Source: Penicillus capitatus (taxonomy: Eukaryota; Plantae; Chlorophyta). From it: a stretch of 64,000 nucleotides of DNA. The position numbers and the translations under genes are program-made. Each line of letters begins with the position of its first letter. Position 1 is the stretch's first letter. Shown one piece after another: positions 7,251-55,321 of the stretch. The stretch is taken from assembly GCA_965649825.1 (NCBI GenBank), contig OZ287700.1, positions 1,488,001-1,552,000 of the forward strand. The letters are read 5' to 3'. The notes beneath the pieces were generated by a model, which was not told where the DNA came from, did no database searches, and saw only the letters and a program-made list of their open reading frames with translations.

Positions 7251-8896
7251 ATGGCGACTCTCGGGAGGCTTCCATATCACTCGGGGCCGTCTAGTTGCGC
7301 GTTTACGATCGCGAGCTTGCACAATGCACGTGGCCGCACACAGCACCACAGGGGAGCTACTGTGCAGCCGAGATCGAGGTTCATTGTGGGCCCTGTGTAC
7401 AGCACCTCGACTACTGAAAAAGTGCCTCGACTTTGCTCTGCTTGCTGTCTACTGTCCAACATCTGCTGTGCTGTGCAGGATACGGAGACGGCCTTGGTCA
7501 GTACAGAAGAGCACATCTATGAGAAACTGGATCGCGATGTGAAATACCGTCCCGTTGTTTCTCCAGAGCAGTACCTTCTGAGCGTGCTCATATCCGCCGG
7601 ACTCATTTACATTCCACTTCTCAAAGATCAACAGCTGACGAGCCAAGACTGGCCGAGGCTCAGTCTTATTGTCACTGTTTTTATCATTCTCTTCTTCACT
7701 TTCCGCCAACTCTTTCTCGAGACCTACTACACAGTAAGTGACACATGTCCGACGCCCTCGCTCCATGATGTCTGTGTACCGCAGTTACTGCAGAGACGGG
7801 AGACGCAACTGAGAGACTTTGATTCCATCTTCCGTGTCGCCGACAATATCACAGTGCACTATAAGTGCAAGCGTCCGGATGACACGAAGAGCAACATGGG
7901 CATGCAGCTCTATCACGGTTTCGGCTCAAATCTCTTCTCGTGGAAAGATGTCCAAGACAAACTTGCCATAGAAGTGGACGCTTGTGTCACGGCCACAGAT
8001 CTTCTTGGCTTTGGTTTGACTCAGCGTCCATTCTTTTGGGGTCTCTATAGTCGTGAACGAGATGGAATGCTTGGGCGCGATATTCTCAGATACGAAATGC
8101 GAGATGTTCCCCAAAATGCCGCCAGAGAGGTTCTCGTGGGAAATTCCTTGGGCGGCGCCACAGCCATCGAAGAAACGATACGCGATCCGGAAAATATCAA
8201 AGCCGTTATCTTGATATCGCCGCTTCTCCAGTTGCTTGGCGATCCAAGCGAGGCACCATCACAGAAATGGCCCGAACGCATCCTTGATGCTCTTAATCAT
8301 CTCTTCTTGGTTCGGGGTGGTAGTTTGCTGCTGTCGGCCCTCCTCTGGATTTCCCAGCCAATAGTCTTTCTCTTCATTCGATTTGCCACGCGCCAAAGAT
8401 GGTTCTGGGAATTTGGTTTGGGCTTTGTGTACTATGATAAAGAGAAAGAGGAAACCGTTCTTGATTGGTACAGGTAAGACAGATGCCTCATTTTTGAGAT
8501 CCGTGCGAAACGGGGACTCTTTTGCGAAGGTTTCCGCTATTGGTGCGTGGATGGGAATTCGGAATCATCCGCCTCAGCCGTGCGACCATCTCGAGTCTCA
8601 CCGGAGGAAGAACATTCGTGGACATCTTGAAAAATCGTCGCAATTCGGCGATTGATCAGTTCATTCAAAAAGTCAAGGACCACGACATTCAGGTGTTGCT
8701 TATTCACGGAGAGAACGATAGACTGGTCCCCGTTATCAAAAGCCAGCAGCTTCATGAACGCCTTCCGAACAACAGCAAATTCATTCCCTATCCAGAGTGC
8801 GGACATGTAGCGCATGAAGAGTATCCTGAAAGATTTATCAAAGATACTGTCTCTTTCTTGCATGACGTGAAAAAGGAATCCCCGCAGTCGACATGA
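7251..8896 (+). CDS. Alpha/beta-hydrolase fold protein with probable transit peptide
   Basis: HGFGSNLFSW, DLLGFGLT, nucleophile elbow VGNSLGG, then LLIHGENDRLVP and ECGHVAHEE (Ser-Asp-His triad). Intron after 8472, plus an in-frame 57-nt intron near the 5' end. Confidence 0.85.
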
Positions 8897-9359
8897 ACAT
8901 GTCACAGCAACACATGCTATGAAATCGTGTATGGCGATCGATCGGAAGAGACGTACGTGCAAGGAAAGTGTATTCTCAACTGCGTTCAATTGTGACAAGT
9001 GACAAGGGACAAAATCGGGACATTCTTTCCCGTTCCGCAATTCAGTATTGTCCTTCTTAATGTAAATCCGACACTTTCGTACGTCAACAAGATTTCTCGT
9101 GCTCTGTCTCTGAATGGAATATCGGATCGGTGGCATTCCTGATGTCATCCTTTGATTGTTGAATAGACATTCGTATGTCTCATAAGGCATCGGATTCGAA
9201 AAGACGAAACCGAAAACCATGTCAAAGCTTTTGCATCGAAGAATGCATTTGCCGCTCATCGTCAAGTATCCAACACGATGATCGATGATTACTAATTCAT
9301 CATTATTCGCGTCTTGCCGTTGTGTTTCTTTTCCATTGCGCGCATCCGTTCGACCAGTC

Positions 9360-10255
9360 ATGGCTTCCGCAAGAAACACATTTCAAAACGAAATTGACGA
9401 AAAGGAAAAGCAAGAAGTGGCTGAGAGAGCTGATGACGACGAGAAGGGTGTGCAAGAAGAACAGTCGGACGAAGAAGATGAAACATCGATTGCTGCGATG
9501 TCCGACAGAGAGAGGCGACTGTATCTGTTAAGACAGAAGATGCAGCTCTCTCGCCAAGCCAATCATCAAGCCATCCTCGCCGAAAGCCGTCGAAAGAAGA
9601 CTGCAGATAGTGGCGGACAGGGAGGCGATCGAAAGAAATGGTATGAGGAAAGAAAGAAGAAGCAGGAGGCTCGTCTGAAGGAATTGGGACTCGCACCGGA
9701 CGACGTTCATCGGATCGAGACAGTCGAAGTGGCTTCAGCAAAACACAAGAAGAAAGAGAAAAAGGAAGCCGCCTTTGGATGGGATGTCTTTAATCAGAAG
9801 ACGCTCTACAAGGCATACGAGAAGAGAGCCAACAAAGTGGATAGACACCCTGTGCGTCATGTTCTCGGACAGCGTCTGGCGGTGTAGGTACCTTACACCG
9901 TCGAGGATTACCAAAAACAGAGAGAACTGAATCCAGATCTCTACGGAGAATCGGAGAGCAGTGTTTATGGCCGAGCGCCGAAGATTCCCGAAGAGAACAT
10001 CGACAAGATGGTGAATGAGCTCAGCGAAAGGTGGCTGCCAGAGATGCAAAGAATTCGGCCTTTCCACGCTGTTCCTTTAGGCAACTGAAACGCTCAGAGT
10101 TCAGCAGGCGGCGAAAGCATTACGACGACCGCGATATCGATTTCATCAACGAACGGAATAAGAAATTCAATCGGAAGATCGAGAGAGCCTTTGGAAAGTA
10201 TACCGTCGAAATCAAAGGCAATTTGGAAAGAGGTACCGCACTGCCGGACCACTGA
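9360..10255 (+). CDS. SYF2: Pre-mRNA splicing factor SYF2
   Basis: [18 protein letters not shown]; after two ~50-nt introns, [50 protein letters not shown], the conserved SYF2 C-terminus. Confidence 0.92.
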
Positions 10256-11543
10256 TATTATCAAAGCTTCCCTGCAACGACACATGGACCAAAAATAGTG
10301 TATACGGGACGTATCGTGTCGGACACGTCAGTCGTAACAGACTAAGACGATGATGACGTCTATCTGCGCTGGAACACCTGTCCAATCGCGTCGATGAACG
10401 CATCATAACGCGAGGCAGTACACCGCCGGCGACGACTTACCACTAAGGGACCTTGCCGAACGCCGCCGTTGAAAGGCATCAAAGAAACGCGGTCGACATG
10501 CCAAACAACAAGCACAGGTCCCAACTGCGCCTTAAAAATGCAGATCTCGATTGTCGTCGATTGCGCGAAGGGACTCGGAGAAGGATGCAGATGCGTTGTC
10601 GGAACATTCGGGAATCTTCGACGTCTTCCGAATCTTTTCGGCTTTTATTCTCTCTCAGCGACCGCTTTGTTTCGTCGAGTGTTTTTTTGTCTGAGTGTGA
10701 GTGTTTATTTCCGTCTGTTTCGTCCAAACAGAGTCATACATAGTTTCTGCACATACACACATCATTGTAAATCTTCACATCCCTCGAGGTAACAACACTG
10801 CCCTCCTTCACAATTTTCGCTTATTCTCTTCGGTTTCGCCCATTGATCGATCTCCGATACGGATGCCCTTCGTTCAGAGGCAAAATCTCAAGTCCGAGCA
10901 CCCGAGCAAAACCTCATACCGAAAAATTACGTGTTTCTGACGGCAGCTGGACCAACCGCTGTCCTGCATAAAAGTTACCAGCGTGTTGATAGAGACAGAC
11001 GGCCGCGCATCTTTTCGTTCTCGTGTTTATCGAGTTGTCTTCCGTTCGGCTTGTCTTTTTGTAGAGGCTTACGATAGCGGTTCAATTCATTTGTACAGCC
11101 GGTCGCTGGCTCTTTGAACTTCCATTATCCGACGCTTTCGTTTCTCCCTTTTGGGTATTCTTCTTCGGCTGCCTTCTGGTGTTGACAACTTCACTCGACG
11201 CTAGCCGAAGCTCTACTCTACGTGACGTGGTGCTTCTTGACGCTTCAGGTTAGCCGTCGGACAAAACGCATTGCCGTAGACGCTCCACACGCAGCATCTG
11301 CTGACAGCAGTGAGCGTACGGTGTACCTTTTTTGTTACCTTTTGCCTCCCATCCAACTGACGCAGCGATGGAATGGCTACCAAGGGTGCTATTGTTGTTG
11401 TAGATCCCGTTTAGAAGCATTTTGTTCAGTGACCACGTCTTCCACATCTGAGCGACATTCACTTCTATTTCTCTTCGCTTCTCGGAGATTTCACTGTTGA
11501 GCTCATCTATCGCTTGCAAGAACTAGATTCATAGTATCCATCC

Positions 11544-13408
11544 TTGCTGCATCGAAAGACAAATCGAAACAACAAAAACTATAACATGGAGAGAATCAAT
11601 GCATTTCGTTATGGTCCAACATTGGCGCTTTACGCTGCGAAAAGGGGATACACGCGAAACTTGAAGATGTTGATCCAGGCGGGTGTTGACATCGAAATCA
11701 GAGACCCAGATGGTCAACATCACCTCTCTGCCTTCATCTCCACCGACAGTGTGCTTTTTATGAAGGCATCGAGCATCCGGACGATGAAGGCTGTACCCCA
11801 TTGCTTTTGGCTGCAAAAACGGGAAACTACAGGGCTGTGAAATTCCTCACGGAATCCCGCGCAAACGTTCTCGCATGGTAAGGCCATCCCCCTTGGCAAT
11901 GCGTGGCATTTAATACACCTTCTGTTGATGTGCGCAGTTCGGAGGAAGATGTTTCAGCGTTGCAGTTTGCGTCTATCATTGGTCATACGAAGATCGTCGA
12001 ACTTCTCATCTCTTCTGGATGTAGCATTGATCACTATAGCTTTGACGGTTTCACTGCATTGCATTGTGCGGCAAAACACGGTCATGTAGACACCACAAGA
12101 TTATTGGTTCGAAGAGGGTGCGTCTTCTGTCGGAAGCCCCTCTGTTACACTTTTCATTTGGAATCTAGAGCGGATATCACAGCTAGGACCGGCAAACAAC
12201 ATACTCCATTGTCCCTGGCTGTAAAGCACGGACACCTTGGAGTTGTAAAGGTGTTAATTGGGTGCGGGGTCCACACGGAATTGGTTAAAAATAAAGTGCG
12301 TGGTCTGTCTATTATTGACAGAGATCGATTTCGCCGTCGTGACTGTCAGGGATTTACTCCATTACTGTTGGCCGCTAAGAAAGGACATACAGCTATTGTC
12401 AAGTATCTCATACTATCAGGAGCATGGTTGGGTGCAACCACCGATTCGCAATCATCCGCTTTGCATTTCGCTGCATTTTATGGACATAAAAACGTTGTCA
12501 AGTGTCTTATTGGTGCTGGGATTCGTCTCAACGCTCAAGAGTCGGAAGGATACACGCCCTTACACTTCGCTGCACAAGCTGGACATTACGGAGTAGTCAA
12601 GATTCTGTTAGGTAACACAACATCCTTGTTATGGATCGATCGATCGATCGATTTCGACAGACATGCCCTTTCATGACGGTTATGTTTGACAGAGGAAGGT
12701 GCGGATGTTGACAGAAGAACGTTGACCGGAGTGACGCCCCTGATCCTGGCATCTAAGAAATCGAACCCAAAAATCGTAAAGTTGTTACTTCAAGCCGGAG
12801 CCAATGTCGACGTGCAAACGGACCTGGGCTCCACCGCATTACACTTCGCAAGCTACTTTGGTCATAGTAAGGTTTCAAAGCTTTTGGTTATGCACGGAGC
12901 GAATCTGGAATTGCAAGAGGCAGAGGGGTTCACACCTTTACTCTTTGCCTCTCAAGAAGGACATTTGGCAATCGCGAGAAGTCTGGTGCGAAGTGGCGCG
13001 AATGTCAATGCCGCGACCATTAGGGGATTCACAGCATTGATGCTAGCAACGGATGGGGGATGGATTGAAATCGTTGACTATTTGATCACCGTTGGGGCAG
13101 ACGTGGATGCGACAACGCTGAAGAAGGAGAGTGCGATTCATTTGGCAGTCAAGGCTGGGTCGAATGACATATTGGAGTTGCTGGCTTGTGCCGGTGCCAA
13201 TCTGGATATGCCAGTAATGATATAGACATACGATGTTGCCTGCGAAGTGTCGACGTCTGTGTGCCTTGTGTGTTTGCAGGACGACCGAGGAAAGGTTCCT
13301 GTTGCATGGGCTGTTCGTTATGGGAATCGAGGCGCCATCCATGTACTGTTGGATCATGGGGCTCGGCCTGACATTGACGATGACGATGATGAACTCCTCG
13401 ACCTCTAA
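11544..13408 (+). CDS. Ankyrin-repeat protein (about 15 repeats), multi-exon
   Basis: Many G-x-T-P/A-L-H-x-A-x-x-x-G-H repeats (GFTALHCAAKHGH, GYTPLHFAAQAGH, GSTALHFASYFGH, GFTPLLFASQEGH). Last exon DDRGKVPVAWAVRYGN..DDDDELLDL* ends at 13408. Confidence 0.9.
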
Positions 13409-19300: not shown

Positions 19301-20951
19301 CTAAAGCATCTGGTGCAGTTGCTCCAGTACTTTGTCAACAACGTGCTGTAATCTAGACAGACGGTTCTCCGAATCGGGCTCCTGTGCCAGAGAGGCATCG
19401 ATGTGTTGCCGTATCTTGCATAGACGTGTCTTCATGGCTTCTAGCGCTTTGCGTTCGAGGACGCCAGAAATGGATGACTGTTCGGCTTGGTCTCGGACCA
19501 GGAGAAAGAGGTAGAGATTGAGGACGGCGCTGTATAGTTCTGCCCGTTCAATCACATCAGTCATGTTCTCCTTTTCCCTCAGCATCTTCTTCACGAGATC
19601 AAAAACATGAGGAGAGGCAAAAACGGATTTCATAGAATGTGTATTCCGGGCAGATACGACAGAATGTCGCAGTTGTTGAACCACGAGGGCAGCAATGTCA
19701 GAGAAGGGAACAAAAACCAATTCTTTGAAAAGCTGCCATCGTATGTCTTCTGTGCAGCTCTGTATCAGCAGAGATAATCGATCAGCTGCTTGGGCTTTGA
19801 TCACGCCAAGAGGATGCAGTTGCATATGATTGACAAGCTTCAGGCAGAGTTCCTTCAGATCATCGACATCTGACAAGGGATGTTTCTCGACGGCGGCAGG
19901 AATCATGCATAACCCTGCCAGAATGCATGGAGCTTGTGAAGCAGAGCTGTCAGCTGTCAACAGCATCTGGACAACAGAGAGATCACTATCTGTAAACAGT
20001 CGGGGAATGGTCGAGTATTGATGGGCTGCCCATTGAAGCATGCCACATCCTAATCTCAATTCTTGCTGTGTTTCGGAGACATCCTCCTCGTCTTCTTCAG
20101 AACGATTCCAGACCTCTGCCATGTGAGAGACGCTTTCTTGGATCGGACGTTGCGGAAAGGGCAGTGCTCTCAAGAGCGATCCGAGTTTTGTCGTCACTTC
20201 CTGCTCCATGCTTTTTCCTCCCTCTGCACAATTCTGCTGCAGGATGATCATCACAGACAACAAGCAGCTCAACGAGAGCACCACGAAAGCCATGGTCTCT
20301 TCAGAGACGACCTCGCCGCTTTCGTCGCCCTGCAACTCTCTGCCTGTTTGCAAGAAGGCGCAAATGGACGGTTCGCATTCGGACGTAGACAAATCTTCAC
20401 AGTCTTCCAACAATCTCTTCGCGGCTTTGTGTATCAACTGCAGGGCGATGGAAACAAATCGCTCACGTTTTCTTTGAATCCTCTGGATGCACATAGGCAG
20501 CATTCTTAGGCTGCTTTCAAGGACGGATAGCATTTCATCGACACTGCTCCTCTCCAAAAGCAACGACAGACCATCTGTCCATCCTACAGCAGCCGAACGT
20601 TATGTCCATCGGGACCTTCCTTGGTTGAATCTTACCTGTGAAGACCTCTCTCGCTGGGCCGTTCTGCGACATGATCTCCAGAATGGCGACGCTCAGATCG
20701 TGGCAACGTTGGGAGAGCGTCCCGCATACGAGACAAGGAGTGTAGAGATACAGTGTTGTCTGCTCTAACAGTTCTTCGATTCCTGGAGTGTCTTTGCGAA
20801 AGACCTCCTCCAGAGCCTCCAAAAGAGGCCGTGCCTTTTCCTCCTCGCTCTTTTCGTAGCAATCCATGAGCTCACACTGCAATATCTGAGCATTTTCGAC
20901 GAGAACATCCCCCTGTCCGATAGAACGCATAAGTGTGACCATCCAATTCAT
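19301..20951 (-). CDS. Glomulin/ALF4 (Ybp/Kinetochor_Ybp2-like) family protein
   Basis: SQRCHDLSVAILEIMSQNGPAREVF, LPMCIQRIQRKRERFVSIAL, LIQSCTEDIRWQLFKELV and ELYSAVLNLYLFLLVRD resemble ALF4/GLMN blocks. One intron near 20600. Confidence 0.65.
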
Positions 20952-26991: not shown

Positions 26992-28969
26992 CTACGGCGG
27001 ACGAATAGCCTTTATCCTGTTCATGGTATTGGCTCTGGCCTCATCGATCTTGCCCTGGAGGTAACTCTTTTTGGCATCGAGATGAACGCGCTTCTCCCAT
27101 TCCCCTTCTTCGATGCGCAGGACTTCGTAGCCCATGACTTCCAGCAAACGGACTTTCCAGCGGTAACGTCCTGTTGTTTGTGCGAGCGGTTTTCTGAAGC
27201 TTCGCACAAAGGAGATGCCTTCAACGGCATACTTGAAATTATCATCCAGGTCCAGAATGCAGGTATTGATCAGTCCCTGTTCCAGAAAGCGGCCCTGACA
27301 TTTGTGCCCCATCCGTTCCATGACCACCAACGCAGCAGCCACCCACAAAGGCAGTGGAGATGTGGTTTGCCGAACGCACCAAATGGCTTTCCATCTCTGC
27401 TCGATCTCAACAGGCAGAACGGTAAACTCAGGATCTCGAATCTTAAAGGCCTTGATGTGGAGAATGCCTTGATAGAACTGCCGAATGTCTTCGTCTCTCA
27501 GGGTCTCCAGTCCGATCCGTTGCAAACGGCTGAACATCAGATCCAGCAAACCCGGAGTCAGAATCGGATTGTCCATAATCACCAGCGCCCAGATGAAATT
27601 ACAGATATCTTGAGCGGCGAAGATGATGGGCTCGACATCAAGAACCTCTCTCAGTCGTAGACTCAGCTTCATCCTTCTCGGTGATCGATAGCCGAAGTCG
27701 GCCAATGCCACCAAGATCATGCAGTGATCCCTGACTTGTTCAATGGAGCGAGGCGGTTGAGCAAAGCCGGGACACTCTTCAAGGAGACGACCGATCTGCT
27801 CGTCTGTGGGACGGATGAACAGCTGAGAGAGACTCCACAGTACAACAGCAAGAGACTGACTGTGACATTCCTTGCTCCCCAGAATCTCGACGATGCTCTC
27901 GATGATCGATTCGTTCTCTATGTAATGAAAGGCGGCTAAGGACCACAGAATGACTGCCATCTGTTGCGGCGTGAACTCATCGATCATTCCTTCGGCCCGT
28001 CTCAGCAGCCTGAACAGAAAATTCTGTCGGTCTATGTAGTGCAGCATGGCCAGTCCCCATATGGTATTGCTGAGTTCCTGTGGACTGAAATGATGCAGCA
28101 TCACTTTCGCCTGCGCGACCAGAACAGGCAGAAATGGTCGGCAATTCCGGTTCTCTAGGTATGCCAGTCCCAATAGAATGTTCGAAACATTGCGAGGCCA
28201 GAATTCGTGGATCCTCTGCACGCCATGCTCAACCAATTGGTGCAAGAGTGGTTCCCATGCTGTCCACGCCGAATTGGAGGAGGACATCTGAAGGCGCATC
28301 TTTCCCAGAGCCCATACGACATTGCTGACGTGTCTTGGCTTCAGCACAGACACATGCACCTCGACGACATCGAGTAATTCCCTCAGAAGCAGTTCGTGCG
28401 TGGCGCCTGGATGCATTCCGACGTCCTTTGCCATGGAGCCCATTCTGTGCAACATCGTCACTACGTTCACATGATTCACGTCATGACGATGTCGGAGCAA
28501 GACGTCCTGAAAACGATCCAGCGCCACGAGGAACTGGTACTTGTTCAGGAGTCCCTTGGGAGATGCCTCTCGGGCTTGCTGACTGATGTCAATGATCTCC
28601 TGATTGATGGCGCTCTGCTCACTCAGGCCAGTTCCCCGCATCTCTGTGGAAAACCACCGAACCAGATGACCGTCCTGCGGTCCATGCAGCGACTCATACG
28701 CCGCTTGACGCAATCACGGCCGAACGCACTTCGCAGAAACGGCGCAGATCGTTGAGCTCGGCGAGATCGCTGAGTTTGCCCTGGAGGAAGACGCTGTAGG
28801 GATTGGGTGGTGTCCGATGCATCCATTCTTTCAGCTGACGTCTCAACAGGCGCGCGATCCAGTAGATCTGAACAGACCACGGCGGCGTCCTTGCTGCAAT
28901 CGATGCCTTTACAGATCCTCCGAGCGAAGAGACGGCATACCATCTCCTCAGTAGAGCGAGCATCCACAT
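26992..28969 (-). CDS. Second OPR/FAST-like RAP-domain protein
   Basis: HVNVVTMLHRMG, LKPRHVSNVVWALGKM, FSPQELSNTIWGLAML and FAAQDICNFIWALV repeats. C-terminal YAVEGISFVRSF..TTGRYRWKVRLLEVMGYEVLRIEEGEW. A 5' exon from ORF 28694-28969 joins via one intron. Confidence 0.82.
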
Positions 28970-36324: not shown

Positions 36325-37867
36325 ATGGAAAGCTCGACTTTTCACACGGAGGGCAAGAAGCATAACGTGGGAGTGGACATGGACGTAGAGGTCATAAAAC
36401 TAAAACGACAGCAGAAACATCTGCTCACCGCTGTGGCCGCTCTTCTCCTCTTGAGTCTCTTCTGCGTCGCCATGGTCATCTGGCTCAGCGTGGAAGTGAC
36501 CGAAGACAACGATGACGATGGCGGCACAGTTAGGGTTAACGACGGAAAGAGTGAGGTTCCTGCGACGGATCGTGCATCAACACTGAACGTATGGGTTATC
36601 TCGCACTTCTCATGTGACGCCACAATGGGATCTTGGCGATCTAGGAAGATGCACGTGTGGTGACGTTGACATCGAGACCAGACTCTTCGTCCGAAGCGCG
36701 GCCTTTACTGGTCGGAACTGGGTACTGGACGGAGAAGGCGTCTCTGCCCTATGGCCGATCTGATCACCACGTACGTCTCCTGACCGCGCAAAGCTGACAG
36801 GCGAAATGGAGTGTCCCAGGCGGTAGCTGTCGACGATTTCATCTATATTATCGGCGGCCAGAACACAACAGCAGTTGTGGTCGATGATGTCCAGACCACA
36901 ACAGAAGCTGTGCTTGACGATGTTACGATTTATGATACTATCATGGATACCTATGCCAGTGGACCATCTTTGCCCTCTCCACTCCACAGATTTGGCTCAG
37001 CCTATGACACCGATCGTCAACAGATTTACGTTTTTGGAGGCATGAATGTGTCGGATGGACATGCCTTGGATGCGGTTTATGTACTGGATATCGAATCTCA
37101 GAAATGGACAGAAGGTCCGAAGTTGCCGTTTCCACGTTCGGATCTCTGCGGAGCTTATGTTGATGGCCATGTCTATGCCATCGGCGGTTACAGTTTGGAT
37201 TATGAGGAGACGCTGGACACAACGGAAGCGCTGGACATCGCGTCTGGAGAATGGAAGGAGGTGGCAAGCATGCCAACACACCGAGGCGATTGCAAAGCGG
37301 CACCGTTTGGCCGAGGAGTGATCGTGGTGGGAGGATATTACGATCCGACTGGAGCTTGGAACCATGAAGCCTTTAGAGATGAAGTCGAATTCTATTCTCC
37401 AGTGAGCGGCAACCAACAGATCCGATCACACACCTTGGTGAATTCTGTGTAGGGGGATGATGTCTGGGAGGAGAGAGCTCCGCTGAAAAACGCCCGTGGA
37501 GACAAGGCCATTGTCGTCCTTCCACGTGAACGTCTCCTCGTCGTCGGGGGCGAGACACATAATAGAGGTCGATCTTCTGGCAGAGATGTCGTTCTGTATG
37601 TGGTTGCTGTTCGCAGGGCTTCGCACAGGAGTTGCGACACATCATGTCGAAGAGTACAGTATGTCTGAAGATGTCTGGATTGATCGAGCTCCGCTGCTCT
37701 CCGCCACTTTCAGAACAACGTGTGCCTATGCGGACGGAGTTGTCTATGTTTTTGGTGGCGACGTCACGTGTGCGTCCGATGACGCTGACGACCATTCTGA
37801 ATGCGAGAAATCCGATACTCTGCAAGTCTACTTCGACACAGAACAGCCGAACGTATTCATTACTTGA
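36325..37867 (+). CDS. Type II membrane protein with Kelch beta-propeller
   Basis: A single N-terminal TM (LLTAVAALLLLSLFCVAMVIWL) followed by Kelch blades IYIIGG, IYVFGG, VYAIGG, VIVVGG, LLVVGG and VYVFGG with W-x-x-x-x-x-L/M-P motifs. Confidence 0.85.
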
Positions 37868-39266: not shown

Positions 39267-40883
39267 CTAGCTCGAATCTAAGGCCGAGGCGGCATTGACA
39301 GTTTCCGAGTCCGCAGGGGAGAGCATCATTTCCGAAACCACGGGACCCAGAACAGACGACTGGATCTCGTTCTGCACGCTCTCATTTCCTATACCCGCAC
39401 AGACATTACTGCAATGCCAAGGGACCAAAGCGAAAACGTGCGCAGGTCTGGGCGACGGAGATCGTGTCGATCTGTTCGGGCGGGAAGTAGCACTGGTAGG
39501 CGGAGAGAAATCCCCCGTCGGACGAAATCAACGTCAGCTGCGCAGCAATCTCCACGACCATCGAACGAGCGAAGGCGTTCCAGACGAACCTGGAGAGGAT
39601 AGTGCACCTCGCGTTCCTTCAGGTCTCCTTGAACGATGACGTGCAGAAGGATGCCGCATCGACCAGGGTTGATCGCGCTTTCGACCCAGAGGTCCTGCTT
39701 CATCTGTGTGGAGAGAATCTGATGCTCCCGCGTGTGGTTTCCGCCGTACAGAGATCTCTGGGACTTGCCAGGGACGTAGTACGTCGCCCATGGATCGGTG
39801 GTTCCGATGACGGTGGCACGTGTCTTGCAGGGGCAGCCGATGTACACCACCTGCTCTTTGAGACTGTCAAACACCTGTCGCAGGAAACATGGGAACTGCT
39901 CATCCGTCGGTTGGTCGCAGAATCGACCTTCTTGGCACCCCCAGGCCAGTTGTAGCTGTCTCCGGACACTTCGATGACAAGACTCTCGCGCTCACTCTGT
40001 CGAGCGTAGCGGTCACACTTCATTTGCATCATGCAGCACTTCAACTGCACAGAACACTGAGTCGCGCGCCGTTGGAACGGCCATCTGACTTGCAGGACGG
40101 TATCGAGTGTCGGGAAACCGGGCGGGAACGGCAGCGAAGGACCTGATGCAATCGACGGTCGAAGTTCACGACATGGTGCTCGACAGTGCAGAACCTTTCT
40201 GCCAGGGAGATGTCCTTTCGCGTACAGGCCGTGACCACAGGACTGTAGATCCGCAGGAGCACTTAACATCCTGGTAGTTGTTGGTCGTCGACGTGCAGTA
40301 GCTCTTCGCTTTGCTCTCTGCACGAAATTGCATGTTTCGCACGAGAATTGCTGCTGCGGAGCGCGACGGTGATTCGGGACGAAGTTGTGATTTAAGTCGT
40401 CGTCGATGAGGGCCTGATCCGGCCAGATCTCTTTCTGCACGCCCTTGAACCTGCCGATCGTCTTCGTGATCCGATAGTAGTTGAAAGGACGGATCAGGAG
40501 CTTGTTCTCCTGGTCGTTCCACGCCCCCTCGATGTCGACGGAGAAGTCCAGCTTCGACCTGAAAGCCATACGCGTCAGGGAACATGCAACAGAGACACTG
40601 TCGACGACAGGGTGTCCTTGTAGAGCTTCCTATAGCAGGACTCGTCGTCTGTGACTATGCACTGGAGCGTTTCCGGCAGAAAAGAAGCGTCCACGCCGGG
40701 GATGACGCACAGGAGGTAGTCCAATCGGCTCAAGGCTGGCTCCTTCTCCAGTTTAACTGAACAGCGCCAGGCATCTAGCGGGAACGACGTTGTTCCACGG
40801 GAAAAACGCGAAAGCGAACGGGAGTTCTGAGCGGTCGTCAAATTCGAAGGCCAGCAATCGCACCGCGTGATGTGACGTGCCAT
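39267..40883 (-). CDS. Hypothetical multi-exon protein with strongly GC3-biased codons; family not recognised
   Basis: Exons with consistent GC-ending codons (SKLDFSVDIEGAWNDQENKLLIRPFNYYRITKTIGRFKG; VVYIGCPCKTRATVIGTTDPWATYYVPG; FLSAYQCYFPPEQIDTIS) linked by ~40-55 nt introns. Both ends approximate. Confidence 0.5.
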
Positions 40884-40907
40884 TCGCTGATCGCGGAGCG
40901 AGTCATC

Positions 40908-42393
40908 ATGCTTTCGTGTGGTCCGTCTTCGAAGACGACGTTCGCGAGGACGTCCTCCACCAGGACGAGTCTCTCCGCACGCGCCAACAGCACTCGACGC
41001 TGTGCGGCTCTCCGAGCGACGTCGACAGCGGATGAACCCCCTGCTGCCTGGCCCAAGCGCGCCATCGTGCCCGAACACACGCCCAAACCGGAAGATCCGA
41101 AGGTGCATGCCCCGGAAGTCCAGTGGAATTTCACGGTGTGGCGATGTGACGTAGCCGATTTCTCTGCTCGGGTCGACGGGTTCGATCGGCACGCAGACGC
41201 TCGACATCTGCGCCGAGCATCCCGAGGAATTCACCGTCGTCGCGCTCAGTGCTGGTTCGAACGTCGAGTTGCTTGCCGAGCAGGTTCGACAGTTCAAACC
41301 GAAGCTCGTGGGACTGCAAGATGCTCGTCGAATCCCCGAGCTGAAGGAGCTCATTCGGGACGTGGATGCGCAGCCGGAGATTCTGGGAGGAGCAGAGGGC
41401 GCGATCGAAGCTGCACGGCATCCAGACATTGAGGCCGTGGTGACGGGCATCGTTGGATGTGCTGGACTCGGACCGACGGTGGCGGCCATCGAGGCGGGAA
41501 AGGACATCTGTCTGGCCAACAAAGAGACCCTGATCGCCGGTGGTCCGTACGTCCTGCCGCTGGCCGAAAAGTACGGCGTCAAGATCCTGCCGGCCGATTC
41601 GGAACACTCTGCCATCTTCCAGTGCATCCAGGGTGCGGTCACGCGCGAGCGGTCCGTCTGTGCTACGTGCGAGAGTGATGTGACAGGTCTGCCCGAGGGA
41701 GGAATGCGGAGAATCATCCTGACCGCCTCGGGCGGGGCGTTTCGCGACTGGCCCGTCGAGAGGTTGAGGGACGCCAAGGTGGCAGACGCCCTGAAGCATC
41801 CCAACTGGAGCATGGGACGCAAGATCACGGTCGATTCGGCGACGCTGATGAACAAGGGTCTGGAAGTCATCGAAGCGCACTACCTCTTCGGGGCAGACTA
41901 CGACCACGTCGACGTGGTGATCCATCCCCAGAGCATCATCCACTCCATGGTGGAAACGGCCGATTCCTCAGTCATTGCCCAGCTTGGATGGCCGGACATG
42001 CGGTTGCCCATTCTGTACACCCTGTCCTGGCCGCGGAGGATCCTCACCTCCGAGGAGACCTGGCCTCGATTGGACTTCATCAAGATGGGAGACCTGACAT
42101 TCCGCGAACCGGATCGAAAGAAGTACCCTGCCCTGAACCTGGCCTACGCAGCAGGGAGGGCGGGGGGAACCATGACGGGCGTCTTCAGTGCCGCGAACGA
42201 GAAGGCGGTGGAGTTGTTCCTGGACGAGAAGATCGGATACATGGACATCACGCGTCTGATCGAACAGACGTGCGCAGAGCACCAGAATGACTTGAAGCTG
42301 AAGCCGAACCTGCAAGACATCATAGACGCAGACCTGTGGGCGCGGGACTGCGTCGCTCGCCTTCACCAGAACGAGCAGCAACTCACCGTCTGA
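40908..42393 (+). CDS. dxr: 1-deoxy-D-xylulose 5-phosphate reductoisomerase (plastid MEP pathway)
   Basis: Ser/Arg-rich transit peptide, an intron, then [97 protein letters not shown] and SAANEKAV. In-frame 54-nt intron at 41633-41686. Confidence 0.97.
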
Positions 42394-45584: not shown

Positions 45585-48500
45585 ATGTGGCGTTTTGCAA
45601 TCCTTCTCCAGACGATTTGCGTCGTCGCAGATTCGGCTTTCCGCTTCGGTGCCGTTCTCAGCACAGTCGGTGACACTGCCACGCTCGCCGAAATAAAGAA
45701 TGGATACGAGCTTTATTTCAATACTCTCAATGCAGAAAACGACGGACGCGGATTCGAACTCAAAGGGAAGAAGGGCACAGAGAGCTTCTTCTTTCAATTC
45801 GAGTTTCTCTGGCGTGAGGACATGAGCAACGAGAAAACGCATGAGCGACGCATGAGGGACCTCATTCGAAAGGACAGGGTGCATTTCCTTGGAGGCTCAC
45901 ATCCGGTCTACGCCGAAAGCGAAATGCGCATTGCCAATGAATTCGGCATCCTAAACTATCAGTGTTGTGTGGGGCCTGATTATCTCTACGAGCAAGATTA
46001 CCCCACGGTCTTTGGGATTCAGGCATCCAACAGGCAGTATACAAGCATGCTGATCCGGACATTGCAGCTCAGAAATGTCACTGCAATAGAGTTCGTGTAC
46101 CAGGAAGACGATCCGTTTACGCGGACAACGTGCGAAGCGGCAGAACGGTTCTTTCATGAATTCGACGGCATAAGAGGGACGGATCATAGAGGCGTTGCTC
46201 GTCACCGTTTCAACGCGACCCTCACTCGCAACTCGGCGAGAGAAGCAGCAAAAGAAGCGAAGCTAAGAGGAATGGAAGCCGTTGTGGCATGTGTCTTTCC
46301 AGCAGATGGGAAACGCCTGGTTGAAGCTTTCCATGAGATCCGATATCCCCTGAGGGCTTTCTTCTTGACGACCGGTCCGACGAAGCAAGACTGGGCGGAC
46401 GATTTTGATCCGCCCTCCCTCGCGAACGATCTGCTGAGCGCTGGTCAGTGGCATCCTGGGATAAACTACTCTGATGCGTTTTTCAGATCCACAAGTCGTT
46501 ACGCAGAGATGTACCGAGACAACTACGGCGGCCTTGTGGCGACTTACGAATCAGCTGGGGCGTCTGCTGTTGGACTAACACTCACACAAGCTATTCGAGA
46601 GGCTTTTCGAAGCTGTGACATTTCGGCAACAGGAGGCGATGTTGATGAGCTGCTTTACAATGCAACGGCCATTGAATGCGACCGGGGCGAGATTCAGATT
46701 GGATACCAACGCATTCTTCACGCGCTTTCCGTTTTGGTAATGAAGGAGACCTTCTTTGGAGGCGTCGCGTTCAACAAATTTCGACGAAACGTGGCATTGC
46801 AGCCGGTCACCACGCAGATCTTCGAGCGAAAGGCAGGTGGTGATACCTTCAGAGAGATCGTCGCCGTTTTGCCGCATACCTACGCCAACGAGGTGCTGAA
46901 GTATCCGGCCACGAATCGCTACACTAAAAAGTGCAAGCCTGGATACTTTACTGGTCCTGATCCATTCGATCCTTGCCAGCACTGTGCGCAAGGGGAATTC
47001 TCTGACCTCACCGACGCTGATCATTGCGAAAGGTGTCCGAAAGGAACGTGGACAGATCAATTGGCCCAGCAACAATGCAAACCCTGTCCGGAAGGAACGC
47101 ACACGATTGTCCCCGGCGCCAAAAAACAGAGAGACTGTGTCTGCAGACCTGGCTACTTCAATATTGCCCTGCAAGCAGGAGTGAAGTGCGAACCATGTCC
47201 TGAGGGAGCTGTCTGTCAAGGAGGAGTGCAGCCGCCGATTCCACGACATGGTTACTGGGCAGACGAGTCACGACGATATCAACTGTACGGCTGCGATCCT
47301 CTTTCCAGCTGTCTCGGGGGAGAAAGTATGGCCTGCGAGCAAGGCCGTACTGGGAGGTAAGACTGCTACTGGCAACGTCCTTGCGCCAGATCTCGCTTTA
47401 GGATGTGCTCTGAATGTGCCGATGGCTACTTTAACGTCATTCAGAAGTGCTATCCGTGCAGAGACAAAAGCGAACTCGTTGCATTCTTTATTCTGCTTCT
47501 ATTGGGGTGGTGCTTTGTCGTTCTGCTCTCAAGAACGGTGGATTCGTTCGCGATCATTTTGCAGTGGGCTCAGTTGGCCAACATCATTGGTGACATTCAT
47601 CTTAAGTGGGCAGGTATGGTGACAACACTGTTTGGAATTGCCAGTCTGCTCGACTTGGACGTTGACATTATGGATCCCACTTGTCTAACATCGTGGGGTC
47701 TCAGACAAAAGCTCCTTCTGCAGTTGGCACTTCCTTTTTTGCTGACGGGTTTGGGATGCAGCAGGTATCTGGGATCTGCCTTTGTTCATATGCTGCTCAA
47801 ACATAAGAAACTGAAACTGGGCAGAGGATGTCGACGATTTCTGTCCTTCTTCGTGCGTATCCCGGAGAACGAATCTGAGCTTACCGAGAAACGAGATGCC
47901 ACCATTGCCTCTCTCCTGGCATCCATAAATATCTGTTACATCACGATCACTAAGTATTGTTTCGATGTTTTCAAATGCGAGAAGATCGCTGGAGTCTCGG
48001 TTCTCAGAGTGGATCCCAGTATTGCCTGTGACGAAAGACACGCGATCACCGTCATTGTCGCCGGTTTGGGCATTTGCATATACGTCCTTGGATACCCGGC
48101 ATTTCTCTGCTGGAAGCTCTACCACCTGCACTGCTGTGATCGTTTTGTGGATCCGGTCCAGCTCCGCACATACGGATTCATCTATGCAAAATACGAACTG
48201 GACTATTGCTACACCCCAGCAATCGTCATCGTTAGGAAACTGCTGTTTGTCTTAGTCCTAGTGTACATCAACAACCCGGCATTCCAAGTTGGTGCGATTG
48301 CCGTGATCATCAATGCCTCGCTGACCATCCATGTCTATACAGCGCCGTACGTAGACACGCACCTGGATGTCCTTTTCAGTTTCTTGTTGCTGGCGCTGTT
48401 ATTCGAGGCATTTGGCGGACTGATGTTCTACAGTGAGAATCTACCAGACGCCAATCGACACATTCTGGAATGGATCGTCTTCGTCACGTTCTTGATGCTG

Positions 48501-49493
48501 GTTGTCGTCTTCGTACTCATTTTTGTTGCCGAGATTGTCAAGAAATACTACACCCTGTTTCTCAAGAAGCAACATCGATCTTTTGCCAGAAAGACTAAAG
48601 GCGATGGGCGCCATGGACAGACAGAGGCGTCCGTGGTCAACAGTCCACTTGCCCGCGCTGTTCTGGATACTGTCGGGTCCAGGGACCTGGACAAAAGAAT
48701 CAGTTTGGAGCTGCTCGATACATTCGAACCCGGTTTTGTCTATCGCTGTCTGAGGAAGCATCCAGAACATATCCAGAAGTGGGATCGCCTCACCGACATG
48801 CTCAAAGATTATATGGCCGATGATTCTGATACTTCCTATCTCTCGACCGATCCCGTGGCGAAGTTCTGGAGAAAGCTGGTTGATCGATTTCCTGAGCTTG
48901 TCGATTTTTTGGCAGTCGCGGACGAAGACAGTCGGAACAAGTTTAACGACTTCGCCACAAATCTCTATCGAAACTTCTACCTGTCGAAGAAAATCGAGCC
49001 TTTGCCTCTCATAGGCGTACTGAACTGGAGAGACTATGCTCCACTGGCTCAGTGGCTGGCCATTGCTGAAAAGGAAGAACGTGAGTTTTTCTTGAGCTTT
49101 ATGGGTGAGCTGTTCGAGACGGCTGGCATGCAGGAGGCAGCTGATGCCCTTAATGTAAAGTTTCGAACTGGTGGTCCTGATCCGCATCTGCAGCATCGCC
49201 GAGAACAGACAAATCTTGCGAGGAAAGGGAGAAGAGCTCTGATCCACATGAACAGTGGTTCCAGTCCTTTTCGCCATTCGGCAGCAGAGAAGAATCTCAA
49301 TACCTTGACAACCGTGGCAGTCGGTGTCTCAAAGTTCCGCTTGGGTCCATTGCGAAGCAAGAAGAAATTATCTCAGCCGCTGGCAGCTACGGGGACGCAG
49401 ACAGGACCCTCGACCTCGGAAGCCCCGATGGAATCCGCTCGGGAGACCGATCCAGCGATGGAACCTGTCGAGGAAGAAGACGTCGAGCATTGA
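45585..49493 (+). CDS. Large receptor-like membrane protein: signal peptide, type-1 periplasmic-binding (Venus flytrap) domain, GCC2/GCC3-like Cys-rich repeats, ~9 TM segments, cytosolic tail
   Basis: ORFs 45585-47360 and 47403-49493 are joined by a 45-nt intron at 47357-47401. FRFGAVLSTVG..NGYELYFNTLNA..DLIRKDRVHFLGG resembles LIV-binding proteins. Repeats CQHCAQGEF, CERCPKGTW, CKPCPEGT, CVCRPGYF and CEPCPEGAVC..PIPRHGYW. TM block includes YGFIYAKY..VIVRKLLFVLV. Confidence 0.85.
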
Positions 49494-54392: not shown

Positions 54393-55321
54393 TTAAAGGC
54401 CTTTCTGCCAATTAACACTCCAATCGTAGGGCATGTATCTCACCTTCATCTCATGAGTAATCTGCTCCTCCTGCAAACAATAAGCACCTTGGCGCCACCG
54501 ACATTCTCCACTGATGTGACAGACCTCGAGGTAATGGTTGATAAATGCAATGGTGCTGCCGTATGCTGAAGCCTTGAAATCGGCTTGATACCATTTAAAG
54601 ATCTGGCTCAATTCCGCTGTCTTGCTGGACTCTAGGCAGTTCAGCGGATGTGAGACTATGCAAACAGCTCTTCTGGACTTACTGTCTATTTTGACCCCTC
54701 CTGCTTCGTTGATAAAACGCCGGGTCTGCATCTCCAACTGTTCTTCAAGGTGCTCTCCGTCGAACATAAACGTCGGCAATGGGGGACAGCTGTAGCTTGA
54801 ACAGTTGATAGCAAAATGAATCCTAGGATCTCCAAATTTGCGGATGACATCGTTCTCCAGGTTCTTCAAATTTGTTCTCTTGCCGGCCACGGTGATCGAT
54901 GTCAAAACAAAGAAGCGAGCACGTTCAACGAGACTCACGTTCCCTATCACCGGATCAACCGCACTTGTCTTCTAATCAGATGACGTGACGGTTTACCTTT
55001 CCACTTCTTGTCTGTTTTTTCTAATTTCTGATAGGCGAGATAGATGCTCCAGAGGTTGTAGGCATTGCAATAGAAAGCGAGATCCTCGGGACGACTTTGC
55101 TTTATCGTTCCCGTCACCGTGTGTTGGCGAACGGCATCGAGGTTTTCTTGCAGAACCGTATCGTCTTGGAAGAGAAGATGATAGCGGACAAAGCCGGTGT
55201 CGGAAATCACGTTGCCAAGGGGTTGCATCTTCACTTTCGCTGTCTGGGACGTCACGCGTCGACGAAAAGAAAAACAGCAGCAGCGAGATGCACGCTGAAC
55301 AGGCACCATACGTAGTGTCAC
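54393..55321 (-). CDS. DUF547-domain protein
   Basis: EDLAFYCNAYN, LKNLENDVIRKFGDPRIHFAINCSSYSCPPL, LEEQLEMQTRRF, LSQIFKWYQADF and YMPYDWSVN. The 5' end is uncertain and may extend towards 55640. Confidence 0.85.

What the first reader, a model, noticed from the sequence alone, without database searches (positions are those of the whole stretch)
45585..49493. Class-C-GPCR-like architecture in an alga: Venus flytrap + Cys-rich stalk + multi-TM domain
Seen: signal peptide, a bacterial-like LIV/periplasmic-binding domain (~430 aa), 4-5 GCC2/GCC3-like CxxC repeats, about nine hydrophobic segments and a ~330-aa cytosolic tail, with only one intron in 3.9 kb unlike its intron-rich neighbours. Known: VFT-CRD-TM order is the layout of mGluR/CaSR/taste receptors. 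The YGFIYxxY..RKL TM motif instead resembles the TRP-like/FLC (DUF907)-type membrane domain seen in protists and fungi. Inference: a convergently assembled small-molecule (amino acid/amide) sensor coupled to a channel-like or signalling TM module, possibly with a horizontally acquired sensor domain. To my knowledge it is functionally undescribed in algae.
Basis: partly seen in the sequence, partly recalled or inferred. Interest (0 to 1): 0.72.

Follow-up and report, generated by a model that had tools for sequence, protein, structure and literature searches.

The report
Algal flytrap sensor on nine-helix membrane core
A real green-algal gene encodes a surface receptor whose nutrient-binding "Venus flytrap" head sits on a cysteine-rich stalk and a nine-helix membrane core related to fungal Pkd2/Flc calcium-channel candidates and to the parasite CRMP secretion triggers. 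The design is untested but occurs in many protists.

Summary
Two same-frame ORFs (45585-47356 and 47402-49493) are joined by a conserved 45-nt GT..AG intron into a 1,287-aa protein. It has a signal peptide, a type-I periplasmic-binding-protein fold (AlphaFold2 pLDDT 88.7; Foldseek matches to bacterial solute-binding proteins and to CaSR/mGluR), a 19-cysteine stalk, about nine TM helices and a 312-aa cytosolic tail. It is under purifying selection (dN/dS 0.16).

There is no class C 7TM domain. I also found that the stalk base (DUF7630) plus the 9-TM domain is homologous to the conserved core of apicomplexan/ciliate CRMPs (hhalign 99.6%, E 1.8e-24).

It is not a one-off convergent assembly or a recent horizontal transfer. 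A profile search found 8,191 cluster representatives. In these the same core carries VFT, Cache, sugar-binding-protein, lectin or Ig ectodomains, in green algae, a pelagophyte, Rhodelphis, Mantamonas and Anaeramoeba.

Most likely function: an extracellular small-molecule receptor that signals through Ca2+ entry or its conserved tail. No paper in the searchable library describes the VFT version.

The parts
45585..47356 (+). Exon 1: start codon, signal peptide, VFT, most of the Cys-rich stalk (aa 1-590 plus two bases of codon 591)
   Evidence: ORF list; join and translation; the 90% orthologue's conserved sequence begins at the matching Met
45585..45635 (+). Predicted signal peptide (aa 1-17, MWRFAILLQTICVVADS)
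   Evidence: Hydrophobic N-terminus; helix 2-12 with low pLDDT just before the first VFT strand. No dedicated signal-peptide predictor was run.
45636..46874 (+). Venus-flytrap / type-I periplasmic-binding-protein domain (aa 18-430)
   Evidence: Peripla_BP_6 32.1 bits against cut-off 31.7; ANF_receptor 18.7 bits. AlphaFold2 pLDDT 88.7, pTM 0.77. Foldseek: 8wch E 2.7e-21, 4nv3 TM-score 0.75, CaSR and mGluR ectodomains.
46917..47465 (+). Cysteine-rich stalk (aa 445-612; 19 Cys, six CxxC): Ephrin_rec_like/GCC2-GCC3 repeats, DUF7631, then juxtamembrane DUF7630. The interval contains the intron.
   Evidence: Ephrin_rec_like 42.6 bits; NCD3G 25.9 (below cut-off); DUF7631; DUF7630 24.7 bits. Profile match to Chlamydomonas mastigoneme Mst1 repeats, E 9e-17. 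pLDDT 84-94 over aa 451-570, falling over the last ~20 residues of the model.
47357..47401 (+). 45-nt phase-2 GT..AG intron containing an in-frame TAA
   Evidence: Sequence. Conserved in L001. Same position and phase in paralogues, 60 and 66 nt. Homologues are colinear across it.
47402..49493 (+). Exon 2: end of stalk, 9-TM domain, cytosolic tail, stop codon
   Evidence: ORF list. Identical ORF product in the protein collection, P0006.
47466..48554 (+). Nine-helix membrane domain (aa 613-975), PF06011 / CRMP-core type. Model helices at aa 613-633, 637-655, 691-724, 748-779, 802-836, 862-879, 883-904, 910-937, 940-971.
   Evidence: Hydropathy. AlphaFold2 helices, block pLDDT about 65-87 for most of TM3-TM9 with weaker dips. 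PF06011 hits. hhalign to the TgCRMPA core, 96%. dN/dS 0.10.
48690..49202 (+). Conserved cytosolic helical tail domain (aa about 1021-1191; motif AKFWRKLVDRFPELVDF), with no Pfam family
   Evidence: Conserved columns in A1. My tail HMM hits 79 of 143 relatives. dN/dS 0.06. No Pfam match at E<=1.
49203..49490 (+). Poorly conserved, probably disordered C-terminus (aa 1192-1287)
   Evidence: pLDDT about 30-35; dN/dS 0.61

Best explanation
The gene encodes a plasma-membrane chemoreceptor of a modular, pan-eukaryotic receptor superfamily.

Shown: a secreted-side type-I PBP (Venus flytrap) domain is followed by a rigid, disulfide-rich stalk that ends about five residues before TM1. Next comes a nine-helix membrane domain homologous to fungal Flc/Pkd2 (PF06011) and to the conserved core of alveolate CRMPs. 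A conserved helical cytosolic domain follows.

Inferred mechanism: a small solute, identity unknown (an amino-acid-like, amide or organic-acid ligand is the prior for this fold), closes the flytrap. The stalk passes the movement to the 9-TM domain, probably within a dimer or higher oligomer. The output is Ca2+/cation entry through the 9-TM domain, as reported for reconstituted S. pombe Pkd2, and/or a conformational signal to the conserved tail that recruits cytosolic partners, as proposed for CRMPs that trigger regulated exocytosis.

My estimates: extracellular ligand-sensing receptor about 0.75. Given that, a Ca2+-permeable output about 0.5.
For: - Gene model and selection. dN/dS is 0.16 overall, 0.10 in the TM domain and 0.06 in the tail domain.
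- VFT fold.
- PF06011: 13/19, 23/28 and 21/26 relatives match, best E 1e-12 to 2e-11. Bryopsis relatives score 36.3 and 40.7 bits, above the 28.5 cut-off.
- CRMP core homology: hhalign 99.6%, E 1.8e-24 over 364 columns; 97.6%; 96% for the close family. Reversed and shuffled controls give <=0.5%. DUF7630 scores 64.6 bits in TgCRMPA.
- The same core carries classic ligand-sensor ectodomains in relatives: ANF_receptor, Peripla_BP_6, Peripla_BP_4, dCache_2, sCache_2, lectin-like.
- EF-hand loops lie just after the TM domain in about 15 relatives (Pfam EF-hand families).
- Topology: nine helices; basic loops and tail fall on the inside; conserved Cys-bearing loops fall outside. This matches the nine TM helices of Pkd2. 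An N-terminus-out orientation was shown experimentally for TgCRMPa.
- Pkd2 calcium permeability: title and abstract of PMC9727806.
Against: - No ligand, localisation, expression or conductance data exist for any VFT-bearing member.
- The query's own PF06011 and DUF7630 scores are below Pfam's cut-offs.
- The TM-plus-tail model is only moderate (pLDDT 61) and found no solved structural neighbour. No pore can be pointed to.
- The molecular activity of CRMPs is unknown. Flc proteins were first described as flavin carriers, so a channel is not the only precedent.
- This protein has no EF-hand.
Confidence: 0.6

Rival explanations
1. Tethered substrate-binding protein plus transporter. The VFT captures a nutrient (amino acid, amide, organic acid) and hands it to the 9-TM domain, which carries it across the membrane. 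This would be a eukaryotic counterpart of bacterial transporters with fused binding domains, or a transceptor.
For: The closest structural matches of the VFT are ABC-transporter solute-binding proteins. Relatives carry Peripla_BP_4 and one carries OpuAC, both transport-type binding domains. From my own knowledge, yeast Flc proteins of PF06011 were first described as flavin carriers. The family is multigene, with tandem copies, as nutrient transporters often are.
Against: The same core also carries Cache, lectin, Ig, cadherin-like and beta-helix ectodomains that do not deliver substrates. A rigid 19-Cys stalk and a conserved 170-aa cytosolic domain suit signalling better. Relatives have EF-hands. 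The characterised CRMP homologues act in signalling and exocytosis.
Confidence: 0.15
2. Mechanosensor or cell-surface-integrity and contact sensor. The ectodomain anchors to wall or matrix material, and membrane stretch or wounding gates the 9-TM domain. This would suit giant siphonous cells that seal wounds quickly.
For: S. pombe Pkd2 of PF06011 is reported as stretch-activated. CRMPs are proposed contact sensors. The family is expanded in siphonous green algae: Bryopsis has at least 5 copies, and there are Caulerpa, Ostreobium and this genome.
Against: A well-folded bilobed PBP cleft under purifying selection argues for a small ligand. VFT members also occur in small unicells such as Dunaliella and Nannochloris.
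Confidence: 0.12
3. A divergent class C GPCR that signals through heterotrimeric G proteins.
For: VFT followed by a Cys-rich domain. Weak NCD3G hit of 25.9 bits, and PF07562 is precomputed for 7 of 18 paralogues. Foldseek alignments to CaSR and mGluR span 550-590 columns.
Against: No 7tm_3 match at E<=1. About nine helices rather than seven. The membrane domain is homologous to PF06011 and the CRMP core instead.
Confidence: 0.03
4. A recent, lineage-specific fusion in which the sensor domain was acquired from bacteria by horizontal transfer.
For: Pfam's best VFT match is the mainly bacterial Peripla_BP_6 model. The top Foldseek hit is a SAR11 binding protein.
Against: - This VFT subtype travels with the TM-domain clade across Ulvophyceae, Chlorophyceae and Trebouxiophyceae.
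- No NCBIfam match for any of 18 family members.
- No PDB sequence match at E<=10.
- No bacterial hit in the word-based search.
- Normal GC content.
- A spliceosomal intron is shared by paralogues.
- An ancient transfer before the core chlorophytes diverged is not excluded.
Confidence: 0.05

Closest known systems
Cysteine Repeat Modular Proteins (CRMPs) of Apicomplexa and ciliates (TgCRMPA/B, PbCRMP1-4, Tetrahymena CRMP1/2)
   Same: A juxtamembrane Cys-rich module (Pfam DUF7630) sits directly before a nine-TM core. hhalign gives 99.6% over 364 columns for the broad family and 96% for the close family. The ectodomain is large, variable and modular. The N-terminus is outside and the C-terminus inside. 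Free-living protists have multigene expansions.
   Different: CRMP ectodomains are adhesive modules (EGF, Kringle, MAR, lectin), not a VFT. CRMPs work in a complex that triggers rhoptry or mucocyst exocytosis. The algal conserved tail domain was not compared with CRMP tails. The Toxoplasma cores do not hit PF06011 in Pfam.
Fungal Flc/Pkd2 'TRP-like' family (Pfam PF06011: S. pombe Pkd2, Trp663, Trp1322; yeast Flc1-3; A. nidulans TrpR)
   Same: The membrane domain matches PF06011 over about profile positions 147-420. The layout is signal peptide, ectodomain, nine TM helices, cytosolic tail. Published links to Ca2+ homeostasis and stretch-activated Ca2+ permeability.
   Different: The fungal ectodomain is a small Ig/ML-like lipid-binding domain of about 150 aa, with no VFT and no Cys-rich stalk. 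The query's score is just below Pfam's cut-off. The N-terminal third of the Pfam model is not matched.
Class C GPCRs (mGluR, CaSR, T1R, GABA-B)
   Same: The VFT fold and a Cys-rich spacer between VFT and membrane. The Foldseek alignment covers VFT plus CRD. Logic: small-molecule capture far from the membrane, passed down a stiff stalk.
   Different: There is no 7tm_3 domain. The stalk is of the Ephrin_rec_like/GCC2-GCC3 plus DUF7630 type and about 170 aa long, not the 9-Cys NCD3G. G-protein coupling is not expected.
Bacterial type-I solute-binding proteins (LIVBP-like; e.g. PDB 8wch, 4nv3, 4eyg)
   Same: Fold, with target-normalised TM-scores of 0.69-0.75. Peripla_BP_6 match at threshold.
   Different: Sequence similarity is near nil, 12-16% identity, with no HMMER hit to any PDB chain. 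Here the domain is part of a eukaryotic membrane receptor.
Ionotropic glutamate receptors / plant GLRs
   Same: An N-terminal ANF/LIVBP-type domain. A Tetraselmis relative is auto-named 'Glutamate receptor, ionotropic, plant'. The concept of a ligand-binding clamshell driving an ion pathway.
   Different: No Lig_chan pore domain and no S1S2 type-II clamshell were detected. The automatic name is a mislabel driven by the ANF domain.

Membership tests
Class C GPCR | Venus-flytrap (type-I PBP) ectodomain | tested here: met
   AlphaFold2 pLDDT 88.7. Foldseek matches to CaSR and mGluR at E about 1e-19 to 1e-18.
Class C GPCR | NCD3G nine-cysteine domain | tested here: inconclusive
   PF07562 scores 25.9 bits against a cut-off of 38.9. 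It is precomputed for 7 of 18 paralogues. The stalk is better explained by Ephrin_rec_like plus DUF7630.
Class C GPCR | 7tm_3 heptahelical domain | tested here: not met
   No PF00003 hit at E<=1. About nine helices. The membrane domain is homologous to PF06011 and the CRMP core.
Class C GPCR | G-protein coupling | not testable with these tools
   Needs biochemical assays.
Flc/Pkd2 TRP-like (PF06011) | The query itself reaches Pfam's gathering score | tested here: not met
   24.8 bits for the full protein and 25.9 for exon 2, against 28.5. E-values are 1e-5 and 5e-6.
Flc/Pkd2 TRP-like (PF06011) | Family-level homology of the membrane domain | tested here: met
   13/19, 23/28 and 21/26 relatives hit PF06011, best E 1.3e-12. 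Bryopsis P0022 scores 36.3 bits and P0049 scores 40.7.
Flc/Pkd2 TRP-like (PF06011) | Nine TM helices, N-terminus out and C-terminus in | tested here: met
   Prediction only: AlphaFold2 helices, hydropathy and charge distribution. Compared with Pkd2. No dedicated topology predictor was run.
Flc/Pkd2 TRP-like (PF06011) | N-terminal Ig/ML-like lipid-binding ectodomain | tested here: not met
   No such Pfam hit. The ectodomain is VFT plus Cys-rich stalk.
Flc/Pkd2 TRP-like (PF06011) | Ca2+ permeability or mechanosensitivity | not testable with these tools
   Needs electrophysiology or reconstitution.
CRMP (cysteine repeat modular proteins) | Nine-TM conserved core | tested here: met
   hhalign A1 against TgCRMPA: 96.0%, E 3.8e-9. 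A5 against TgCRMPA: 99.6%, E 1.8e-24, 364 columns. A4 against TgCRMPB: 97.6%. Controls <=0.5%.
CRMP (cysteine repeat modular proteins) | EGF-like Cys-rich module abutting TM1 (Pfam DUF7630) | tested here: met
   Query aa 573-610 scores 24.7 bits, E 2.6e-5, just under the cut-off of 27. Relatives score 27.7 and 29.5. TgCRMPA scores 64.6 bits. The motif GxxGRxCxxCxxGYF is shared.
CRMP (cysteine repeat modular proteins) | Role in triggering regulated exocytosis within a multiprotein complex | not testable with these tools
   Functional property known from Toxoplasma and Tetrahymena genetics.
Type-I periplasmic binding protein (Peripla_BP_6 / LIVBP-like) | Pfam match at the gathering score, and a bilobed alpha/beta fold | tested here: met
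   32.1 bits against 31.7. Foldseek target-normalised TM-scores of 0.69-0.75 to bacterial binding proteins.
Ionotropic glutamate receptor / GLR | Lig_chan pore domain and S1S2 clamshell | tested here: not met
   No such Pfam hit at E<=1.

The most novel reading that the evidence does not exclude
VFT-, Cache- and sugar-PBP-headed proteins on the DUF7630 plus nine-helix core form an unrecognised, pan-eukaryotic class of chemoreceptors in which ligand binding directly opens a Ca2+-permeable pathway. This would be a third way of wiring a flytrap sensor to the membrane, beside class C GPCRs and iGluRs. It would also mean that CRMPs and fungal Pkd2/Flc are contact- or stretch-gated versions of the same machine.
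Probability: 0.3. Interest if true: 0.82.

Novelty: new variant of a known kind. Interest (0 to 1): 0.6.

Why it matters
Three separately studied groups appear to share one membrane core: fungal Pkd2/Flc calcium-channel candidates, the alveolate CRMPs that trigger rhoptry or mucocyst discharge, and thousands of unannotated protist surface proteins. How that core signals is an open question for both the fungal and the parasite proteins, partly because their natural stimuli (stretch, host contact) are hard to apply cleanly.

Members with a flytrap or Cache head should respond to a defined soluble ligand. That would let the core be switched on at will in oocytes, yeast or liposomes. For algal biology, a multigene family of this kind is a candidate for sensing dissolved nutrients or signals in green algae.

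Tried and rejected
- Foldseek of the TM-plus-tail model against the PDB gave nothing (best E 0.77). The model is only moderate, pLDDT 61.
- HMMER of the A1 profile against PDB sequences gave nothing meaningful. The VFT alone gave no hit at E<=10.
- NCBIfam scan of 18 VFT-plus-stalk family members, to find a bacterial donor family, gave no relevant hit.
- tblastn found no paralogue inside the window, only the gene itself.
- Ten literature searches for VFT with TRP/Flc, PF06011, ANF_receptor with Ephrin_rec_like, Bryopsis with PBP, and class C GPCRs in algae found no description of this architecture. The GCC2/GCC3 search led to the CRMP papers.
- The class C GPCR and iGluR readings were rejected on their membrane domains.
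- The reading of two separate genes was rejected on homologue colinearity and on the domain that straddles the junction.
- I did not try to assign the ligand.
Full report
**1. Is the feature there?**

Yes. The + strand carries two long ORFs in the same frame, 45585..47360 (591 aa) and 47403..49493 (696 aa). They are separated by one in-frame TAA, which lies inside a canonical GT..AG interval of 45 nt at 47357-47401. Removing it gives a 3,864-nt coding sequence and a 1,287-aa protein. Stop-free runs of this length do not arise by chance in about 50% GC DNA: (61/64)^591 is about 5e-13 by my arithmetic.

Four observations support the splice:
- Full-length homologues read straight through the junction: P0001 (1,319 aa, 46% identity over 98% of the query), the Ostreobium quekettii partial protein P0002, and Bryopsis BSKO_04968 (P0022).
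- The 45-nt interval, with its stop, is conserved in a 90%-identical orthologue from another assembly (L001).
- Two tandem paralogues on the window's own contig have an intron at the same codon and phase, 60 and 66 nt long.
- One cysteine module (Pfam DUF7630, aa 573-610) straddles the junction.

A 33-nt alternative intron is also open. It would insert SRFR into a motif (GxxGRxCxxCxxGYF) that is uninterrupted in all relatives.

The gene is under purifying selection against its orthologue. dN/dS is 0.16 over exon 2, 0.10 in the membrane domain, 0.06 in a conserved tail domain and 0.61 in the extreme C-terminus, at dS 0.44.

**2. Context**

The neighbours are ordinary green-algal nuclear genes. 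They include FAST/RAP proteins, ankyrin, Kelch, an alpha/beta hydrolase, DXP reductoisomerase just upstream and a DUF547 protein downstream. The DXR-receptor-DUF547 order is kept in L001. GC content of the gene (0.48-0.52) is that of the window.

The window belongs to a 702,701-bp contig of an ENA assembly (ERZ25074695). From the contig names I would guess this is a metagenome assembly. The nearest named family members are from Caulerpa, Bryopsis and Ostreobium, so I infer the source is a bryopsidalean-like ulvophyte.

The window has 50 ORFs of 150 aa or more, and several neighbours also sit in long ORFs.

**3. Anatomy**

- aa 1-17: hydrophobic leader.
- aa 18-430: Peripla_BP_6 at 32.1 bits (cut-off 31.7) and a weak ANF_receptor match. 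AlphaFold2 on an 18-sequence family alignment gives a confident model of aa 1-591 (pLDDT 88.7, pTM 0.77). Its best PDB neighbours are bacterial type-I solute-binding proteins: 8wch at E 2.7e-21, and 4nv3 and 4eyg with target-normalised TM-scores of 0.71-0.75. CaSR and mGluR ectodomains also match, with alignments of 550-590 columns that include the stalk. At sequence level the VFT is very divergent: no PDB chain at E<=10 and no NCBIfam family.
- aa 445-612: 19 cysteines with six CxxC motifs. Matches are Ephrin_rec_like at 42.6 bits, weak NCD3G, DUF7631 and DUF7630. The closest solved sequence is the repeat region of the Chlamydomonas mastigoneme protein Mst1 (E 9e-17 with the family profile). 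The last cysteine is five residues from TM1.
- aa 613-975: about nine helices by hydropathy and by the AlphaFold2 model of exon 2 (pLDDT 61 overall, about 65-87 for most TM3-TM9 blocks). With nine spans, the basic loops and the tail fall inside and the conserved Cys-bearing loops fall outside.
- aa 976-1287: cytosolic tail. It contains a helical domain (about aa 1021-1191) that is conserved across the family but has no Pfam model.

**4. What the membrane domain is**

It is not a class C 7TM domain. No 7tm_3 hit appears at E<=1.

The query scores 24.8-25.9 bits on PF06011 against a cut-off of 28.5. Bryopsis relatives score 36.3 and 40.7 bits. In total 13/19, 23/28 and 21/26 relatives match, with E down to 1.3e-12, covering roughly the C-terminal two-thirds of the Pfam model. 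The best-studied PF06011 protein, S. pombe Pkd2, has the same plan: signal peptide, ectodomain, nine TM helices, cytosolic tail. It is reported to become Ca2+-permeable on membrane stretch (PMC9727806).

**5.

A literature search on GCC2/GCC3 led to the Cysteine Repeat Modular Proteins (CRMPs) of Apicomplexa and ciliates. Their 'conserved core' is two EGF-like modules plus nine TM domains (PMC9815656). I took the published TM-core sequences from that paper's S2 Table and compared them with my alignments:
- Broad alignment of this gene's TM-domain relatives against the TgCRMPA core: 99.6% probability, E 1.8e-24, 364 columns, running from the juxtamembrane Cys module to TM8.
- A second alignment against TgCRMPB: 97.6%, E 4.3e-12, 365 columns.
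- Reversed and window-shuffled controls: <=0.5% for the broad alignment.

Pfam's DUF7630 is the CRMP juxtamembrane module: 64.6 bits in TgCRMPA and 24.7 bits in the query.

CRMPs have an extracellular N-terminus. They are needed for rhoptry discharge in Toxoplasma and mucocyst exocytosis in Tetrahymena, and are proposed to be contact sensors whose molecular output is unknown (PMC9670195; PMC9815656).

**6. Distribution**

An exhaustive profile search with the TM-plus-tail alignment found 8,191 cluster representatives at E<=1e-3, 2,278 at <=1e-10 and 186 at <=1e-30.

Among the top 143, my own sub-HMMs find the TM domain in 130, the stalk in 88, the tail domain in 79 and this gene's VFT subtype in 17. 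The VFT-subtype members include Caulerpa lentillifera, several Bryopsis genes, Dunaliella salina, Nannochloris desiccata and Pleodorina starrii.

Of 54 further long relatives, 22 carry ANF_receptor-type VFTs. Others carry dCache_2 or sCache_2, Peripla_BP_4, Laminin_G/pentaxin, cadherin-like, Ig, beta-helix, DOMON or filamin domains. Several carry EF-hand matches. A separate motif scan places EF-hand loops just after the membrane domain in about 15 relatives.

Named sources span Chrysophaeum (pelagophyte), Rhodelphis, Tetraselmis, Mesostigma, Cymbomonas, Mantamonas and Anaeramoeba. All are 'hypothetical' or carry names borrowed from one domain. A Tetraselmis member, for example, is auto-named a plant ionotropic glutamate receptor.

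In this genome the family has roughly ten or more paralogues, judging by distinct ENA hits of 70% identity or less. Two are in tandem on the window's contig.

**7.

The layout analogy with mGluR/CaSR is real but is an analogy. The sensor-stalk-membrane order is shared; the membrane engine is different.

'Convergently assembled in an alga' is too narrow. The stalk-plus-9TM core is an old eukaryotic cassette that accepts many ectodomains, and VFT versions exist in at least three supergroup-level lineages. The highest-scoring TM-domain relatives all carry this VFT subtype. This suggests that head and core have evolved together within core chlorophytes.

I found nothing pointing to a recent bacterial origin of the head.

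**8. Mechanism**

Shown:
- the domain order and folds;
- homology of the core to PF06011 and to CRMPs;
- purifying selection;
- the habit of this core of carrying bona fide ligand-sensor domains.

Inferred:
- A small solute closes the flytrap.
- The stiff disulfide stalk, which abuts TM1, moves the nine-helix domain, probably in an oligomer. CRMP cores are predicted to pair through their TM domains.
- The output is Ca2+/cation entry and/or a signal through the conserved tail.

I put about 0.75 on 'extracellular ligand-sensing receptor'. Given that, I put about 0.5 on a Ca2+-permeable output. The EF-hands placed just after the core in relatives, and the Pkd2 data, favour calcium. The lack of any identified pore, and the flavin-carrier history of Flc proteins (my own knowledge), keep a transporter or transceptor rival alive at about 0.15. 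A mechanosensor or contact-sensor reading gets about 0.12.

**9. Novelty**

This is a new variant of a known kind. The membrane core is known from fungal Flc/Pkd2 and alveolate CRMPs, and the VFT and stalk are known modules. I found no paper in the searchable library that describes the VFT-headed form or places CRMPs together with PF06011. That library omits most subscription journals, so the absence is not proof.

**10. Limits**

- No expression, localisation or ligand data were available.
- The membrane model is of moderate confidence.
- The signal peptide and topology were not run through dedicated predictors.
- The ligand was not assigned.
- The source organism is inferred only from the nearest named homologues.

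Noticed in passing
window 41269-42393 (+), and 40001-42000: A 374-aa ORF encodes most of DXP reductoisomerase (MEP pathway; three Pfam domains, E 1e-26 to 1e-39). It lies in the most GC-rich stretch of the window (0.594). Long antisense ORFs with no Pfam match overlap it, e.g. 40575-41870 (-), 431 aa.
   Followed up: partly
window 5546-7207 (+) and 26992-28713 (-): Two long ORFs with FAST_1 and/or RAP domains, the kind of organelle RNA-binding protein that is common in green algae.
   Followed up: no
window 11903-12676 (+), 36811-37452 (+), 7161-8477 (+), 19301-20563 (-), 54393-54950 (-): Other neighbours: ankyrin repeats, Kelch repeats, an alpha/beta hydrolase, a YAP/Alf4/glomulin-like protein and a DUF547 protein. 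The DXR-receptor-DUF547 order is conserved in L001.
   Followed up: partly
window 46575-47249 (-) and 48441-49277 (-): Long antisense ORFs (224 and 278 aa) lie inside the receptor gene. They are probably a by-product of its codon usage. Not tested.
   Followed up: no
L004 10001-14113 and 14923-18912 (same 702,701-bp contig as the window, record positions about 88-97 kb): Two further family members sit in tandem. Their sequence around the intron is nearly identical apart from a 6-nt length difference in a CT-rich tract. This suggests recent duplication or gene conversion.
   Followed up: partly
L003 3705-7256, next to the paralogue at 8214-12235: A paralogue on a 1.68-Mb contig lies directly downstream of a 1,183-aa NB-ARC plus TPR gene (a STAND/NLR-like protein). 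Four family members map to that contig.
   Followed up: no
window 45963-45968 (aa 127-128): An invariant vicinal Cys-Cys, in the motif NYQCCVGPD, follows a strand of the first VFT lobe. GGSHP (aa 103-107), centred on invariant G104 and S105, lies on the preceding loop. These loops usually line the cleft in type-I PBPs. Their position in the model could not be inspected.
   Followed up: no
relatives P0088, P0091 (Mesostigma), P0119, P0122 and others: Canonical EF-hand loops, often in pairs, lie 40-400 residues after the nine-helix domain in about 15 relatives. The window protein has none.
   Followed up: partly
relative P0199 (Tetraselmis sp. GSL018), same cluster as P0073: A family member is automatically named 'Glutamate receptor, ionotropic, plant', apparently because of its ANF-type domain. 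Anaeramoeba members are named 'repeat outer membrane protein', 'G protein-coupled receptor-related' or 'insulin-like growth factor binding protein'.
   Followed up: partly
window 45585-47360: The ORF2 product is in the protein collection (P0006), but the ORF1 product did not appear among the hits of a search with its own sequence. The orthologue's ORF1 call (P0030, 622 aa) starts 31 codons upstream of the conserved Met.
   Followed up: no
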